Positions 18,601 through 27,600 of a DNA stretch of 64,000 nucleotides are shown here, piece by piece. The notes beneath the pieces are model-generated. The model was not told the origin of the DNA. It did no database searches and worked only from the letters and a program-made list of their open reading frames with translations. Position numbers and translations under genes: made by a program. The stretch lies in the NCBI GenBank assembly GCA_051294905.1, contig CM119373.1, forward strand, positions 9,486,001-9,550,000, read 5' to 3'. Within the stretch, counting starts at the first letter, position 1. Every line of letters starts with the position of its first letter. This DNA is from Botryllus schlosseri (taxonomy: Eukaryota).

Positions 18601-21600
18601 TGAGACGGCTTGCCAAAGTGATCGAGTTTACATGGTCATGTTTATCGCAGCTCGAGTGATACACAGCACTTCGGGATTCAGCTCGGGAATATGCTACGGC
18701 AGTTGGGATATCCAGAAATACTTCAACACAATTCTAAAATTACCAAATACACCATGTATATATTCTTTCTGATAGTGAGTTGTGCAAGTTATATTGTCGG
18801 CTGTACTCGCTTCATAAGTTGTGACGCTGAACAAATAAGACCACGTGCATATTAGAAAAGCAGTATCATGCATCGATAGAGCTTTCATATTCATCCAGTT
18901 GAAATACGTGCCGGTTTCGTGAAATATGAACATGAAATGTTGGTATGTTGCTGTAGTCTGGATTCGTTTTCAAGTACCGGTAATGTTCAAGCCGTCTCCA
19001 AGCGACTCTGCGGAACGGATTGAGCTCAAGACGGATTGAAGCCGTTTGCCTTTTTCTCTTTTTCAAAAACGAGAGAGTCGGATTGACGAGTCAGCTTCGA
19101 AGCTGACCCAAACGTCCATGTAAATGGGCTTATAGATAGCTATTGAGTTTGCATGTTCACGGCATGTCTGTAGTCACAAATTGCAGTATCAAGAATATAG
19201 TATTAATACTGTCATGATGGCGGAGTTGAAGTCCAATAGCTTGCTAACTTGCCATTCCTTTCAGAATACGTTTGGGGCACATGGTCATCTTCAGGTTGCA
19301 GTCAATCCTGCGGCGGCGGTACCATCACCTTCTCGCGGCCTTGTATGGACGACACTGGCCAAACTATTTCAGAGTCATTTTGCCCAGGCGGATCTTCGAA
19401 AAGTTCTACGTTATTGAGTTGCAATACTATGAGATGCCCACCAGGTAAAATCGATTTGACGTATAAAACTGCCGATATATTGAACAGTTTCTGTGGTGAT
19501 TCGTATAGTCTTTTGTATTCAAGCCATCGTGCATCATGTAATCATTGCTTTTTTAATCATTAGTTTCCAATTCCTCTGTTACTTAAATCGCTACTGTTAC
19601 TGTTACTGTTGTATTTGACGCCGAGATTTAAGTTAGTAAAAGCCAACGAAACAAGAGTCTTCTGTTTACTGGTACGACAATGTTACTAACTTAAATTCTA
19701 TTTCGCTGCTTGGAGAAAGATCGCCTGTAGTAATGTCTGGAGAGAAGTATATTAAAGTTCCAACGTTGGACGTGTTACCAGACTCTGCAGATAGTGTGAA
19801 GATATTCTCTCATTGGGAGCGGGTGTTGAAGAGTTTAATCGAAGCTATAACTGCTCCTTCAACTGATGTAAACAAGCTCGCCATATTGTCAGGTTATTTA
19901 TCACCTGAAGTCTTCTCATTTATTGAAGTAATTGATGATTACGATGCTGCTATCACCGAGCTGCAGTCCCTTTACAAAAAGAAGAAAAACGAAGTCTACG
20001 CCCGACATCTGCTAGCAACTGCAACGCAAGAGGTTGGAGTTGACGTGTCAGAATTTTCTAGAAAACTGATGGCGTTGTCTAAAGATTGTAACTTCTTGGC
20101 CGTAAATGCTCAAAAGCATAAAGAGGAAGCTGTAAGAGACGCTTTCATCACTGGGCTGAGGTCCCCAGCAATTCGACAGAGATTACTGGAATGCGATGAA
20201 CTAACCGGGCAATTCCCTGCACAGACAACCGATGTTCCCACCACTACCTCTTCAAATCTCTTGAAATTTAGTACACGCACAGATGAGCTAATTCCAAACA
20301 GGATGAACTTTATTTCATGAAAATTGGACTTTTGGGTCGAAAGTTACGTCACTTTGAAAATTGACAATTTTCTGCTCAGTGCGGGTCTGCAATTACAGGT
20401 TTTATCAATGCAATATTCAAGAAGGTGTAGCTAGATGTTAGACGACAGTTGAGATACGGCACTTGGATTTATTTGAAGCTTGTCTGATCGTCTATATTTC
20501 CAAGTGAAATTTAATGCCCTTTAGGTTAGGGTCGAAGGTTAAATTGAGGGGGAATTTGGTCAATGGTCTAAAATCAGTCAGGCGTTACACGATTTAGACT
20601 GCGGATTGCTCAAAAACATATTAAAATAATTTGGAAAATAGGATCTTAAATGAAAATTTGCTTCAAGAAGACTTCGTTCATAGCTGTTTGATTTTGGCTT
20701 TTGGACCGTAAAGTGATGAAATTGCAGTTTCAAGAGCACACTTCATTTTCACATGGAAATGCTGTAGTAGTAGTGTGTTTTCGGACATCTATTCTGGGGT
20801 GCGTGTGGACATCATGTCTGGCGTGTGTTAGGACAGTGTTGTCACTCGCTGACATAGTATCTGGGATCTGTTTGTGTTGCGCCAGACATGACTCAGACCT
20901 GATATCTGCGTACTTATTTTATCCGGACATGCTCCGGAGCTGATACCTGCCCACCAAATACCCCCAGACATGGTCCGAACCGGATATATGCGCGCTTAAT
21001 GGTCACAGATATGCGTCAGACGTGATACCCGTGTCCTAAACGACGCGTTTTTGCTGATATCTGCGATAGCTGGGTATAACCACAGTAGTGGTGGCTGAGT
21101 ATATCCACATTCACAGTGGAGATAGCTGAATACATCCAAAGCTATCACTACTGTAGTTATACTCAGCTATCACTGCTGTAGATATACCCAGCTATCGCAG
21201 ATATCAGCAAAAACCGCAAATATAGAGGTCATATATAGACCAAATGTCGTTTAGGACGTGGGTATCACGTCTGACGCATGTATGTGTCCATTAAGCGCGC
21301 AGATATCAGGTCCGGACTATGCCTGGGGGTATTTGGTGCGCAGGTATCAGCTACGACACATGTCCAGATTAAAATAGTGGGCAGGTATCAGGTCTGAGGC
21401 ATGTTTGGCGTATCACAAACATATTCCAGACACGATGTCCGAGTAGCAAACACAGTCTGGACACACCCCAGGCATGATGTCCGAACACCTTCCAGACACG
21501 ATGTCCGAATGACAACACAGTCCGAGCTCACCCCGATACGATGTCCGCGTTGCAAAACAGTCAGAACACACCCGAGCCATAATATCTGCGGTGAGCTCGG

Positions 21601-24600
21601 ACTGTGTTGTCATTCGGACACATACATGCATAACGGACACATACATGCATAATGGACACATACATGCGTCAGACGTGATACCCATGTCCTAAACGACATT
21701 TGGCCTATATATGACCTCTATATTTGCGGTTTTTGCTGATATCTGCTATAGCTGGGTATATCTACAGCAGTGATAGCTGAGTATACCCACAGTAGTGATA
21801 GCTTTGGATGTACTCAGCTATCTCTACTGTGAATGTTAATATACTCAGCTACCACTACTGTGGATATACCCAGCTATCGCAGATATCAGCAAAACCGCGT
21901 CGTTTAGGACGCGGGTATCACGTCTGTCGCATATATGTGTCCATTAAGCGCGCATATATCCGGTTCGGACCATGCCTGGGGTTATTTAGTGGGCAGGTAT
22001 CAGCTCCGGAGCATGTCCGGATAAAATTAGTGCACAGATATCAGGTCTGAGTCATGTCTGGCGCAACACAAACATATCCCAGATACTTTGTCAGAGTGAC
22101 ATCACAGTCCTAACACACGCCCGGCATGGTGTCTGAACACCCCCCTCATACACGATGTCCGAGGGACAAAACAGTCCGAACTCGCCCCAGACACGATGTT
22201 CGAATGGCAACACAGTCCTAACAGACCCAAGACGTGATGTCGGAACACACCCCAGACATGATGTCCACACGCACCCCAGAATAGATGTCCGAAAACACCC
22301 TACTACTACAGCATTTCCATGTGAAAATGAAGTGTGCTCTAGAAACTGCAATTTCATCACTTTACGGTCTAAAAGCCAAAATCAAACAGCTATGAACGAA
22401 GTCTTCTTGAAGCAAACTTTCATTTAAGATCCTATTTTCCAAAATATTTTAATATGTTTTTGAGCAATCCGCAGTCTAAATCGTGTAACGCCTGACTGAT
22501 TTTAGACCATTGACGAAATTCACCCTCAATTTAACCTTTGACCCTAACCTACAGAGCATTAAATTTCACTAGAAAATATAGACGATCAGACAAGCTTCAA
22601 ATAAATCCAAGTGCCGTATCTCAACTGTCGTCTATCATCTAGCTCCACCTTCTTGAATATTGCATTGATAAAACCTGAAAGTGCAGACTCGAAATGAGCA
22701 GAAAATTGTCAATTTCCAAAGTGACGTAACTTTTGACCCCAAAGTCCAATTTTCATGACATAAAGTTCATCCTGTTTGGAATTAGCTCATCTGTGCGTGT
22801 ACCAAATTTAACAAGATTTGAAGAGGTAGTGGTGGGAGCATCGGTTGTCTGTGCAGGGAATTGCCCGCAAAAAGCCTTCCAGACTGCGGACACGTTAGAA
22901 AGAGCCCAATTGTTCGCCAGCTCGTACAATGTCAACCCCCCTTCGTCTGATACCATCGCTTCTGCGGAAATCGCCGCAGTTCGGAAAAGCGATCCTGAAC
23001 ACGGAACAGATTTTACTGCGGCTGTAGAAAAGCCCGGAGCACCGAGATTACTGCGCAAATGCCTCTTCTGCGGCGGATCTCATGTGGCAGACAAGCGCGT
23101 TTGTCCTGCAAAGGACGTCGAATGCCTGAAATGCGGAAGAAAGGGGCATTTTGCAAAGGTATGTCGATCCCCTCGTTCATATGACATCCGAGCAACCGCC
23201 AGCATGCTTCTAGCAGGAGTTCCAAATTGTCTCTGGCGTGCCTCATGCACAGCTAAAATTCATAAATTACTTGTGGGCGTTCTATTAGACTCGGGCTCTT
23301 TCGAAAATTATATGGACGAGTCGGTAGCCATTAAACTAGGATTTTTGCCACGAGGTCAGTCCACTACTATATCACTCGCGTCCAAGACAGCGACGGCCGA
23401 AGTTTCCGGCACATTTACTGTTTCTTTCGAAATGCTATCTCGAAACTATGTGGGTGTCACATTCGGGGTGGTTAAGGATTTGTGCGCTGATGTAATTCTT
23501 GGTCATGATTTCATGAAGAAGCACAAGAAAGTCATTTTCGAGTTTGACGGAAACGAAGAACCGCTGACAATACAAAGTCGATCGTGCGCTTTGTCCCCTG
23601 CTAAGGCAGAGCCTCTTCAGCTATTTCGGTTCCTAGATTCCAATTGCAAGCCTATCGTCACCCCATCAAGAAATTATAGTCGCGAAGATCAATCGTTCAT
23701 CAAGGACGAAGTTAATCGCTTACTCGAAGGAGGAATAATTGAGCCTTCTCGTTCTCCTTGGCGTGCTCAAGTATTGGTTACGAAGGTTTCCAGGCACAAG
23801 AAAAGACTTGTCATTGATTATTCGCAAACCGTAAACAGGTATACTCCGCTTGACGCGTATCCCTTGCCAAAAATTGAAACTATCGTAAATGAAGTGTCGA
23901 AAGGTAAAGTATATTCGACTATTGATTTGAAGTCTGCTTATCACCAAGTCCCGCTATCTTCATCTGACAAGCCGTTTACCGCTTTTGAAGCTTGCGGCTC
24001 CCTTTATCAGTTTTGCAGATTGCCTTTCGGTATCACCAATGGAGTGGCTGCTTTCCAACGTTTTATCGATTCGTTCATCGACGACTACAGTTTGAAAGGG
24101 ACTCTGGCTTACTTGGACAACATCACTATATTCGGCAAAGATGCCGCGGAACACGACGAGAGACTTCAAGCTTTCCTCAAAGCCGCATCCGATTGTCGAC
24201 TAACGTTGAACGAGAACAAATCCGTCTATAACGTGAGTGAATTGCGTCTATTGGGTCATCTGGTGTCGCACGGATCCATTAAACCCGACCCAGATCATCT
24301 GAAACCATTGATTGAGTTGCCACCCCCTAAATCGGATAGAGAGATGAAAAGGATCTTGGGTATGTTCGCATATTATTCAAAGTGGATTCCATGCTTTTCT
24401 GATAAAATCAAACCAATGCTTAGCAATTCAGTTTTTCCACTGACTGGGCCTGCCCTGACCTCATTCAATGTTCTGAAGGAAGACTTGATAAACGCCTCCC
24501 TTTGTTGTATTGACGAATCTGAACCGTTTGAAATTGAATGTGATGCGTCCAACAACGCTATTGCTGCTATTCTCAGTCAGCGAGGTAGACCTGTGGCATT

Positions 24601-27600
24601 TGGCTCGCGAACATTTGCTAAAAGTGAACTAAATTATCCTGAGTCGAGCATGATACACATTGGCAACAACTGAGCTTCAGAAGAAAAAAAAAAAAATAAA
24701 TTATCCTGCTGTTGAAAAAGAAGCAGCCGCAATCATGCATGCTATATGAAAGTGGAGGTACCTTTTACATGGTCGGAAATTCCGATTGATAACTGACCAA
24801 AAAGCCCTGTCGTTCATTTTTCAGAAAAAGCATCGCAGTAAAATAAAAAACACTAAATTGACACTGTGGAAGCTGGAACTTAGTGTTTTCGACTACGAGA
24901 TTGTTCACAGACCAGGAGTAGAAAATATTGCGCCTGACACTATCTCTCGGATTTGCAGTCTAACGGCTTTGTCCACAGATTTACGCGAACTTCACAACAT
25001 TTTAGGATATCCGGGCATCCGTAGGTTGAGTCATTCTGTTAAATCTAAAAACCTACCCTATTCAATGGAAGACGTCAAAAAGATTTGTGGTAGCTGTAGA
25101 CAATGCTCCGAATTGAAGCCTAGATTTTTCAACAACAACGAGCATCATAAACTTGTCAGAGCCACTCGCCCATGGGAGCGCATCAGCATGGACTTCAAAG
25201 GCCCCGTGGCTGGGAGAAACAGGTTTTTATTGATTGTTGTGGATGAATACAGTCGGTTTCCTTTCGTGTTTCCATGTCGTGATATGTCTACTCCAACCGT
25301 GATGCGCAACTTGAAGACGCTGTTTTCGCTCGTAGGAGTTCCCGAATATATCCATAGCGATAGAGGAAGTTCTTTTATCTCCAGAGATTTGATCACGTTT
25401 TTAACCAAACGTGGTGTCGCTACTAGCAGGTCTACTCCGTATCATCCTACTGGTAATTCTCAGTGTGAACGCATTAACCAAACGATTTGGAGAACAATCA
25501 AATTGATTCTTGCTACGGAGCGGCTGCCGGAATCTGCGTGGGAAATGGTGTTGAATGATGCGCTACATAGCGTGCGATCGCTGCTTTGTACAGCTACTAA
25601 CGCAACACCACATGAACGATTTTTTGGTTTTCCTAGACGCTCGATGATTGGACCCTCGATTCCTGATTGGCTACTTTTCGCCGACTCTGTGCTGTTGCGA
25701 CGTTTCCATCGATCTTCGAAGTCTGAACCGCTTTGCGACCCGGTCGAGCTGCTTGATGTGAATCCTAAGTACGCGTTAATACGCCACGAAGATGGAAGAG
25801 AGTTCACCGTGTCCGTGAGAGACTTGGCTCCGAACCCTACCACCGTCGATGTGGAGGGACCGGAAGCGAGAGCCGATACGTCAAGGACTGAAATGATTCC
25901 GACGTCGAATGATCGTGCCGACGCGTCGGATGATAAAGAGCCCGAGAATGAGACGTCGTTATTAAACGACAATTCGTCGGATACGCCAATGCCGCGTCGA
26001 TCTAATAGGGTTAGAAAGTGTCCGGAATGGTACGGCGACCGCGTAAAGTGATTTTGATGTGATAATGTGCCAATTTTGTGTTCAATTTTATTTGGTGGGG
26101 GAGATTGTGGTGATTCGTATAGTCTTTTGTATTCAAGCCATCGTGCATCATGTAATCATTGCTTTTTTAATCATTAGTTTCCAATTCCTCTGTTACTTAA
26201 ATCGCTACTGTTACTGTTACTGTTGTATTTGACGCCGAGATTTAAGTTAGTAAAAGCCAACGAAACAAGAGTCTTCTGTTTACTGGTACGACAGTCTCAT
26301 ATCAGATTCAATAGACTCCACCATCCCCATATATTTATACACACAATGTGTTATTGAAGGCATTCACTTTTACTAGGAAATGTTAGTGCATTTCAGGAAG
26401 AATACAGCCTATAAATAATATCGTCACAGCCTCACAGTCTTATTACGAAATAAGAGGTGGTATCTATTGTGTTTTTGTGAGCCCATCTAAATCTATTGAA
26501 GGGATGGTGAACTTATCCAGTCGAATGTTAGGTGAATTCAATATCGGCAGACTTAATGTCTGTAGACTATTCGATCCAAGCGCAAGGTCACAGTACGATT
26601 CCTGAAGCGCCGAGTCGAGTCAAGTCATTTTCGCAAAGTGACTCGAGTCAAGTCAAGTCATACGAAAAAGTTGGCCCAAGTCATCCCAACACTGGTAGTC
26701 CATGAACTGGAGCTCCATAAATATCAAATATATAAGTGTAATATATTAATCGGATCGGCTAAGAAGTAGACACTGACTGGCGGTTGATTTCTGCTACATG
26801 TGACGATGTAGGCGTTGTATTATTTATCTCAATATGTTCAATTGTTAATTCATGCATGTCGATCACTTTATTCAGTGGTTTCGGATTGCAAGAATACGAT
26901 GCTTGACCTCGTATTTCTAATCGACGGAAGTGCTTCCATCGAGGAAAAGGAGTTCCAGCAAGTCTTGCAGTGGATCCTGCAATTGGTGGATGAGCTACAG
27001 CCTGCGCTAGCGGGGGCAGAGACGAAACCACGGATTGTGATAGTGCAATATTCCAGCAACGTTCGAATTGAACTGGAACAAACGATACAAGAGTCCTCTG
27101 AAGAAATAAAGCTATCCGTGGACGCTATTAAACAACTTGACTTCGGAGAACATGCATATCGCGCGCTGAGATTCATCAACAGTGAAGTAGTCACCAGGAC
27201 TAGGCCAGGTTCCGACAAGATCCTGATCACAGTTACTGACGGACTATCAACCGTTAACTACGACGCAGACGCCGTCAATCGCACCAGAAGTAATTTTGAG
27301 ATCATGCTTGCGATCGGCGTGGGGAATCAAGTTGATGACTATCAGCTTCAGGATCTTTCTCATAATACCGAACCTATCCTGATCAATTCTTTTGATTCTC
27401 TCACCAATATCACGGAATTGGTGGCGGAAAGGGCTTGTTCTTCAGTATCCGAAGGTAATTATCGATCTCTTGTACATGTGGTGGTGGCCTACTTGAACTG
27501 ATATATGTTTACAGNNNNNNNNNNNNNNNNNNNNNNNNNNNNNNNNNNNNNNNNNNNNNNNNNNNNNNNNNNNNNNNNNNNNNNNNNNNNNNNNNNNNNN

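What the first reader, a model, noticed from the sequence alone, without database searches (positions are those of the whole stretch)
19626..19696. Gypsy element without a tRNA PBS but with a perfect 14-bp self-complementary PBS: likely self-priming outside chromoviruses
Seen: 3 nt after the LTR end, TTACTAACTTAAAT (19683-19696) is the exact reverse complement of ATTTAAGTTAGTAA (19626-19639) inside the LTR, and there is no TGG-initiated PBS. Known: S. pombe Tf1 and the Tf1/sushi chromovirus group prime reverse transcription by folding the transcript 5' end onto the PBS and cleaving it with RNase H. This element has no chromodomain and has a Mag-like double CCHC gag. Inference: tRNA-independent priming in a different Gypsy lineage, with transcription predicted to start at about 19626.
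Basis: partly seen in the sequence, partly recalled or inferred. Interest (0 to 1): 0.8.

Follow-up and report, generated by a model that had tools for sequence, protein, structure and literature searches.

The report
Self-priming LTR retrotransposon clade in animals
This broken Gypsy-type retrotransposon, like its relatives in at least five animal phyla, has no tRNA primer site; instead the site pairs with a piece of its own LTR that ends in the poly(A) signal, so it most likely primes reverse transcription with its own RNA.

Summary
The 14-nt stretch at 19683-19696 is the exact reverse complement of 19626-19639 in the 188-nt LTR, and no TGG-type site follows the LTR.

The pairing is a trait of the whole clade:
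- 37 of 53 related loci that hold the LTR/leader junction have an exact stem of at least 11 nt at the same place.
- I found 33 different arm sequences. In 29 of them the 3' arm starts exactly 1 nt after the LTR-terminal CA.
- The named hosts are tunicates, a cnidarian, a mussel, a sea cucumber and a spider.
- Ten of 13 stem pairs show compensatory changes, 99% of cells are paired, and G.U pairs are almost absent.
- The 5' arm nearly always ends in the poly(A) hexamer.
- gag usually starts within 30 nt of the 3' arm, which leaves no room for another primer site.
- None of the relatives checked has a chromodomain.

Best reading: Tf1-like self-priming in a non-chromoviral Gypsy clade, probably Cigr-1-like, with a primer that ends at the poly(A) signal.

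Not shown here: the transcription start, the cleavage, and the placement in a tree. This copy is dead: it has a nested insertion, one frameshift and one stop.

The parts
19492..26293 (+). Whole LTR retrotransposon, 6802 bp including a 2662-bp nested insertion
   Evidence: Direct repeats found; domain order
19487..19491 (.). Left copy of the 5-bp target-site duplication; it matches 26294-26298 at 4 of 5 positions
   Evidence: Relatives have perfect 5-bp duplications
19492..19679 (+). 5' LTR, 188 nt, TG...CA
   Evidence: 100% identical to the 3' LTR
19626..19641 (+). 5' arm, the proposed self-primer. 19626-19639 pair exactly; the homologous register runs to 19641
19635..19640 (+). Poly(A)-signal-like hexamer AGTAAA at the 3' end of the 5' arm
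   Evidence: In relatives the same position holds ATTAAA, AATAAA, GATAAA, TTTAAA or GTTAAA
19642..19673 (+). Rest of R plus U5, with a short inner stem (19642-19645 with 19670-19673)
   Evidence: fold. An RCCT/GCCA motif follows the hexamer in 25 of 33 families, and a stem of at least 4 bp is modestly enriched. Weak evidence
19681..19696 (+). Self-complementary primer-binding site (3' arm). 19683-19696 pair exactly; there is one mismatch at 19682
19733..26051 (+). gag-pol coding region, broken: one nested insertion in gag, one frameshift and one in-frame stop in pol
   Evidence: counts only
20206..22867 (.). Nested non-coding foldback-like insertion with 630-nt inverted arms, 95% complementary
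23060..23164 (+). Two Cys-His motifs of gag nucleocapsid; the first is non-canonical, the second is CX2CX4HX4C
   Evidence: translation; invariant Cys and His columns
23252..23512 (+). Aspartic protease domain
23759..24259 (+). Reverse transcriptase domain (RVT_1)
   Evidence: The nearest solved structure is Ty3 RT
24458..24643 (+). RNase H-like domain, partial match
24981..25448 (+). Integrase zinc-binding domain and catalytic core; no chromodomain follows
26094..26105 (+). Polypurine tract directly upstream of the 3' LTR
26106..26293 (+). 3' LTR; it holds a second copy of the primer arm at 26240-26255

Best explanation
The element belongs to a widespread animal clade of small (about 4 kb) Ty3/Gypsy retrotransposons without a chromodomain. 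These elements do not use a tRNA to start reverse transcription.

Proposed mechanism (inferred):
- A 11-18-nt segment of the element's own RNA, lying in the LTR and ending at or 1 nt past the poly(A) hexamer, pairs with the primer-binding site. That site begins 1 nt after the LTR.
- The element's RNase H cuts the RNA at the 3' end of the paired segment, as in Tf1 of fission yeast. The cut leaves a 3'-OH, from which minus-strand DNA is made across U5 and the rest of R.
- The plus strand copies the primer back into the primer-binding site in each cycle. The two arms therefore stay perfectly complementary while they drift between families.
- The same duplex probably hides the poly(A) signal in the 5' copy of R. 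The signal stays free at the 3' end, where no primer-binding site follows.

Shown here: the pairing, its position, its conservation and its covariation.
Inferred: the cleavage, the identity of the primer, cis versus trans supply, the start of transcription, and the effect on the poly(A) signal.
For: Position:
- In 29 of 33 distinct families the 3' arm begins exactly 1 nt after the LTR-terminal CA. The priming site is what defines the U5 end of an LTR (established knowledge of reverse transcription), so this is where a real PBS must sit.

Frequency against controls:
- 37 of 53 loci holding the junction have an exact stem of at least 11 nt at that place, and several more have it with one mismatch.
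- In the set defined by LTR pairs, 20 of 33 have at least 11 nt of complement in the first 30 nt after the LTR, against 2 of 165 control windows.

Covariation:
- RNAalifold predicts 13 pairs, 10 of them with changes on both sides.
- 99.0% of cells are paired; the covariation score is 0.699 against 0.153 in shuffles (0 of 500 reach it). Slid registers give 24-50% paired.
- An arm paired with another family's PBS gives on average 6.8 of 12 pairs, against 11.9 with its own.

Templated copying:
- Only 2 of 286 cells are G.U. This fits templated copying better than selection on an RNA fold.

No alternative site:
- No leader begins with TGG.
- The gag ATG lies within 30 nt of the arm in 19 of 27 families.

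Breadth:
- The architecture is present in Styela clava, Ciona intestinalis, Xenia sp., Mytilus edulis, Apostichopus japonicus and Trichonephila clavipes.
- A relative with only 35% identity still has an 11-nt arm.

Precedent:
- In Tf1 the first 11 nt pair with the PBS and RNase H cuts between nt 11 and 12 (PMC7175516, PMC4600332).
Against: - There is no direct evidence for cleavage or priming.
- The transcription start is unknown. No TATA box lies within 110 nt upstream of the hexamer in 28 families, and none of the contigs fetched was a recognisable full-length transcript.
- If transcription started downstream of the arm, only the 3' copy of the arm would be in the RNA.
- After cleavage the R segment left for the first strand transfer would be short, roughly 10-25 nt (inferred).
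- The families used for the covariation counts were picked by having a stem, so the first 11 pairs hold partly by construction. The positional and control counts do not share that bias.
- In this copy the pair next to the would-be primer 3' end is mismatched.
Confidence: 0.75

Rival explanations
1. The stem is only a regulatory RNA structure. It hides the poly(A) signal in the 5' copy of R so that transcripts read through, and priming is done by something else.
For: - The 5' arm ends in a poly(A)-type hexamer in about 28 of 33 families.
- The partner strand exists only downstream of the 5' LTR.
- Occlusion of a 5' poly(A) signal by a hairpin is known from retroviruses (my own knowledge).
Against: - The 3' arm sits where the primer must anneal, 1 nt after CA in 29 of 33 families.
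- There is no TGG site, and there is usually no room for another site before the gag ATG.
- G.U pairs, which an RNA fold would tolerate, are nearly absent.
- Occlusion fits well as a second function of the same duplex, but not as the only one.
Confidence: 0.12
2. The primer-binding site pairs with a host tRNA, a tRNA half or another host RNA, and the match to the LTR is incidental.
For: - tRNA halves prime some Ty1/copia lineages (PMC6317226).
- Host tRNAs could not be scanned here: there are none in the window and only one dubious tRNA call in 46 related loci.
Against: - The 33 families have different site sequences, and each matches its own LTR. A conserved host RNA cannot explain that.
- No site starts with TGG.
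Confidence: 0.02
3. The primer arm is supplied in trans, or from the 3' copy of R, and not by fold-back of the 5' end of the same molecule.
For: - The arm lies upstream of the poly(A) hexamer's cleavage zone, so it is necessarily present near the 3' end of every transcript (sequence logic).
- The 5' end of the transcript is unmapped.
Against: - Nothing in the sequence argues against it. It is a variant of the main explanation, not a contradiction.
- The Tf1 precedent uses the 5' end (PMC7175516).
Confidence: 0.1
4. The inverted repeat is a chance match in AT-rich sequence.
For: The arms are AT-rich.
Against: - Shuffles of the window give 0.09 matches expected against 3 found.
- Control windows give 2 of 165.
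- The stem is conserved in position across phyla.
Confidence: 0.01

Closest known systems
Tf1, Tf2 and Tj1 of fission yeasts, and the Tf1/sushi group of chromoviruses
   Same: - No tRNA site.
- The PBS next to the 5' LTR is complementary to a segment of the element's own LTR-derived RNA.
- The arm is short: 11 nt in Tf1, 11-18 nt here.
- A possible second stem lies beside the duplex, as with the U5-IR-like stem of Tf1 (PMC7175516, PMC4600332).
   Different: - There is no chromodomain.
- The hosts are animals of many phyla.
- The primer arm ends in the poly(A) hexamer, a link I did not find described for Tf1 in the papers read.
- Whether the arm is the very 5' end of the RNA is unknown here.
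Predicted self-primers in plants: Tcn1-clade chromoviruses and the Ty1/copia TAR lineage (Houba, Osr-1)
   Same: Self-priming is predicted from sequence alone. TAR shows that the idea already extends outside chromoviruses (PMC6317226).
   Different: Different superfamily or lineage, and different hosts. That paper reports no link to the poly(A) signal.
Cigr-1 of Ciona intestinalis and the Cigr-1 clade (also reported in molluscs)
   Same: - Small Gypsy elements of tunicates and molluscs (PMC6238403).
- The Ciona relative found here has LTRs of about 246 nt.
- Full-length relatives encode one gag-pol protein of about 1200-1280 aa.
- From memory, these figures match the published Cigr-1 figures.
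   Different: Identity with the reference Cigr-1 was not tested, because its sequence and its paper were not available. I found no statement about its priming.
Steamer and Steamer-like elements of bivalves (Mag family only from my memory)
   Same: Small size, short LTRs of about 180 nt, a single gag-pol ORF, and marine invertebrate hosts.
   Different: They carry a TGG-type site: tRNA-Leu in Steamer elements, tRNA-Asn reported for MchSLE1 (PMC8905726, PMC11046912). The clade described here has none.
Conserved Hairpin Site of GalEa (Ty1/copia) elements and bivalve TRIMs
   Same: Animal LTR elements without a conventional PBS, in which an inverted repeat was proposed to act in priming (PMC6934838).
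   Different: The GalEa hairpin arms show a regular mismatch between them; in biv-TRIM the inverted repeats lie in the inner domain. No model was established for them. Here one arm is in the LTR and the other is the PBS.

Membership tests
Ty3/Gypsy (Metaviridae) LTR retrotransposon | LTRs with TG...CA ends, and a short target-site duplication | tested here: met
   Identical 188-nt LTRs. The 5-bp duplication matches at 4 of 5 positions and is perfect in relatives.
Ty3/Gypsy (Metaviridae) LTR retrotransposon | pol domain order protease, RT, RNase H, integrase | tested here: met
   Pfam hits lie in that order. The nearest solved structure is Ty3 RT, E = 6e-38.
Tf1/sushi self-priming group | PBS next to the 5' LTR that is complementary to the element's own LTR-derived RNA, and not to a tRNA | tested here: met
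Tf1/sushi self-priming group | The complementary segment is the first bases of the transcript | not testable with these tools
   No transcript ends are available. There is no TATA box upstream, and the contigs fetched are not transcripts.
Tf1/sushi self-priming group | RNase H cleavage of the duplex makes the primer | not testable with these tools
   This is a biochemical property. The only indirect sign is the near absence of G.U pairs.
Tf1/sushi self-priming group | Chromodomain at the integrase C-terminus (chromovirus) | tested here: not met
   No Chromo hit in this element, in 8 full-length relatives, or in the precomputed Pfam lists of 120 relatives.
Tf1/sushi self-priming group | Placement inside the group in an RT/RH/IN tree | not tested
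   No named reference sequences could be fetched with these tools.
Mag lineage | Placement with Mag, SURL and Steamer in an RT/RH/IN tree | not tested
   No reference sequences were available. Steamer elements use a TGG tRNA-Leu site (PMC8905726), unlike this clade.
   Two Cys-His motifs are present but only the second is canonical. Pfam zf-CCHC was not reported for this copy at E <= 0.01. The feature is not specific to Mag.
Cigr-1 clade | Close relationship to the Ciona intestinalis reference element | tested here: inconclusive
   A C. intestinalis relative (49% identity in PR-RT-RH) has the same architecture and LTRs of about 246 nt. The reference itself was not compared.

The most novel reading that the evidence does not exclude
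An ancient, pan-metazoan Gypsy clade without a chromodomain replaced tRNA priming by self-priming, independently of Tf1/sushi. Its primer is the stretch of R that ends in the poly(A) hexamer. One duplex would then do two jobs: start reverse transcription, and silence the promoter-proximal poly(A) signal. Templated copying of the primer into the PBS would explain the perfect co-change of the two arms without any need for compensatory mutations.
Probability: 0.35. Interest if true: 0.75.

Novelty: new variant of a known kind. Interest (0 to 1): 0.62.

Why it matters
- Self-priming has been shown experimentally only for fission-yeast elements and is usually treated as a hallmark of the Tf1/sushi chromoviruses. 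A second, large animal clade with the same solution would show that tRNA-independent priming is common in animals and either arose more than once or is much older than thought.
- The tie between the primer and the poly(A) signal suggests how a very compact element, with an LTR of about 150-300 nt and a leader of about 20-50 nt, packs promoter, poly(A) site, R, U5 and primer into one stretch.
- Practically, annotation pipelines that look for tRNA-type primer sites will miss or downgrade this clade.
- Host defences that work through tRNA-derived small RNAs directed at primer sites (PMC7472051) would not see it.

Tried and rejected
- **Transcription start from assemblies.** I looked for contigs of about 4 kb that might be transcripts, starting and ending in R. 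The terminal repeats of 123-127 nt turned out to be assembler overlaps. One Logan contig was partial, and for another no DNA was held.
- **TATA box upstream of the arm.** None in 28 families, so there is no promoter-based estimate of the start.
- **Host tRNA scan.** No tRNA gene in the window and only one dubious call in 46 related loci. The tRNA hypothesis was rejected on covariation instead.
- **Rfam scan of 19400-19800.** No family matched.
- **Second stem inside the loop.** Only modestly enriched over shuffled loops: 28 of 33 against 52% for at least 4 bp. I keep it as a weak lead.
- **Literature.** Ten searches found no description of self-priming in this clade. The original Cigr-1 paper and the 1997 survey of self-primers are not held, so prior description cannot be excluded.
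- **Formal tree with Mag, Cigr-1, Tf1 and sushi references.** No way to fetch named references, so not done.
- **A more distant relative (L090).** Its LTR end could not be defined, so it is uninformative.
- **Pieris locus (L089).** No LTR pair was found.

Full report
**1. What is in the window**

A direct repeat of 188 nt (19492-19679 and 26106-26293, 100% identical, TG...CA) bounds an LTR retrotransposon on the + strand.
- A purine-rich tract abuts the 3' LTR.
- The 5-bp flanks match at 4 of 5 positions.
- Pfam finds protease, reverse transcriptase, RNase H-like domain, integrase zinc domain and integrase core, in that order, and no chromodomain.
- The nearest solved structure is the Ty3 reverse transcriptase.

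The copy is dead despite its identical LTRs.
- gag carries one nested, non-coding foldback-like insertion (20206-22867, 630-nt inverted arms).
- Against four full-length relatives, pol shows one frameshift and one in-frame stop (counts only).
- The element lies in an intron just after a host exon that encodes a thrombospondin type-1 repeat.

**2.

- 19683-19696 is the exact reverse complement of 19626-19639.
- With up to 1 mismatch allowed, 3 matches are found in the window against 0.09 expected, and no shuffle reaches that number.
- The leader RNA folds around this stem (-17.6 kcal/mol, z = -3).
- No TGG starts the leader. The nearby TGG is inside the LTR.

**3. Relatives**

The PR-RT-RH piece finds relatives at 41-57% identity but no close copy.
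- The best named ones are from the tunicate Styela clava.
- Others are from Ciona, a soft coral, mussels, a sea cucumber, spiders, crustaceans, insects and a nematode.
- Full-length relatives encode a single gag-pol protein of about 1190-1280 aa without a chromodomain.

I fetched 80 metagenome loci and loci from named genomes.

**4. The pairing is a clade trait**

- In the Styela copy the 15 nt that begin 1 nt after the LTR are the exact complement of an LTR segment at the homologous place. Three positions differ from the window on both arms.
- Across loci with clear LTR pairs, 20 of 33 have at least 11 nt of exact complement to the LTR in the first 30 nt after it, against 2 of 165 control windows.
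- Scanning upstream of the RT match without using LTR calls, 37 of 53 loci that contain the junction have an exact stem of at least 11 nt at the expected place. Several more have it with one mismatch.
- I counted 33 distinct arm sequences. Arms are 11-18 nt (median 15) and loops 21-66 nt (median 46). In 29 of 33 the 3' arm starts exactly 1 nt after the terminal CA.
- The same layout is present in Ciona intestinalis, Xenia sp., Mytilus edulis, Apostichopus japonicus and Trichonephila clavipes, and in a relative of only 35% identity.

**5. Covariation**

- On 22 families RNAalifold predicts a 13-pair stem, 10 pairs with changes on both sides.
- 99.0% of cells pair. The covariation score is 0.699 against 0.153 in shuffles (0 of 500). 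Sliding the register gives 24-50% paired.
- An arm tested against the PBS of another family gives on average 6.8 of 12 pairs, against 11.9 with its own.
- Caveat: these families were chosen because they have a stem, so part of the pairing holds by construction. The positional and control counts in section 4 do not share that bias.

**6. New points**

- The 5' arm ends in a poly(A)-type hexamer: ATTAAA, AATAAA, GATAAA, TTTAAA or GTTAAA, and AGTAAA in the window. The pairing ends at or 1 nt past it.
- G.U pairs are almost absent, 2 of 286 cells.
- The gag ATG follows the arm within 30 nt in 19 of 27 families and within 10 nt in 12. No second primer site fits.
- An RCCT/GCCA motif follows the hexamer in 25 of 33 families and often pairs with a downstream AGGT-like stretch. 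The enrichment is modest.

**7. Mechanism**

The site where the primer's 3' end anneals fixes the U5 end of the LTR (established knowledge). A stem arm that begins 1 nt after CA in nearly all families is therefore the PBS. Its sequence follows the element's own LTR and not a host RNA.

I infer Tf1-like self-priming: the arm pairs with the PBS and RNase H cuts after the hexamer (precedent in PMC7175516 and PMC4600332).

Because plus-strand strong-stop DNA copies the primer, each cycle rewrites the PBS from the arm. That explains the perfect Watson-Crick co-change and the scarcity of G.U pairs.

The duplex would also hide the 5' poly(A) signal (inferred).

The one mismatch in this copy (19640 against 19682) is then a change in this copy or an unresolved heteroduplex.

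**8. What is not shown**

- The transcription start: there is no TATA box and there are no transcript contigs.
- The cleavage.
- Whether the arm acts in cis or in trans.
- The tree position.

**9. Comparison with what is known**

- Self-priming is established for Tf1 and is proposed for Tf1/sushi elements from fungi to vertebrates (PMC4600332).
- It has been predicted for plant Tcn1 chromoviruses and for the Ty1/copia TAR lineage (PMC6317226). 'Outside chromoviruses' is therefore not wholly new.
- Steamer elements of bivalves use a TGG tRNA-Leu site (PMC8905726).
- The closer lead is the Cigr-1 clade of Ciona and molluscs (PMC6238403).
- In ten searches I found no paper that describes self-priming or the poly(A) link in this clade. 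Two key older papers are not held.

Noticed in passing
window 20206-22867: Non-coding foldback-like element nested in gag. Its outer inverted arms are 630 nt and 95% complementary, with further inner inverted and direct repeats. There is no other copy in the window.
   Followed up: partly
window 19249-19460: Host exon encoding a thrombospondin type-1 repeat (Pfam TSP1_ADAMTS) that ends at a GT donor. The LTR element sits about 35 nt into the following intron, on the same strand.
   Followed up: partly
window 19642-19673; the loops of L001, L006, L047, L057, L079 and L083: A conserved RCCT/GCCA motif lies directly 3' of the poly(A) hexamer and often pairs with a downstream AGGT-like stretch. 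It may be a U5-IR-like stem or part of the poly(A) site. The enrichment over shuffled loops is modest.
   Followed up: partly
window 19487-19491 and 26294-26298: The target-site duplication is imperfect (4 of 5) although the LTRs are identical. Relatives in Styela and Ciona have perfect 5-bp duplications.
   Followed up: no
window 19579-19589: A second, shorter + strand stretch inside the LTR resembles the PBS arm. It could pair with the 5' arm within the LTR. I did not examine this in relatives.
   Followed up: no
L013, L018, L031 (contig ends): Exact terminal repeats of 123-127 nt at both contig ends are assembler overlaps of looped assemblies, not LTRs. They can mislead LTR calling in metagenome contigs.
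   Followed up: yes
L010, L029, L059: The repeat between the two element ends runs past the LTR into the PBS arm, so the LTR end was called too far. The cause was not examined; it may be tandem elements or a duplicated junction.
   Followed up: no
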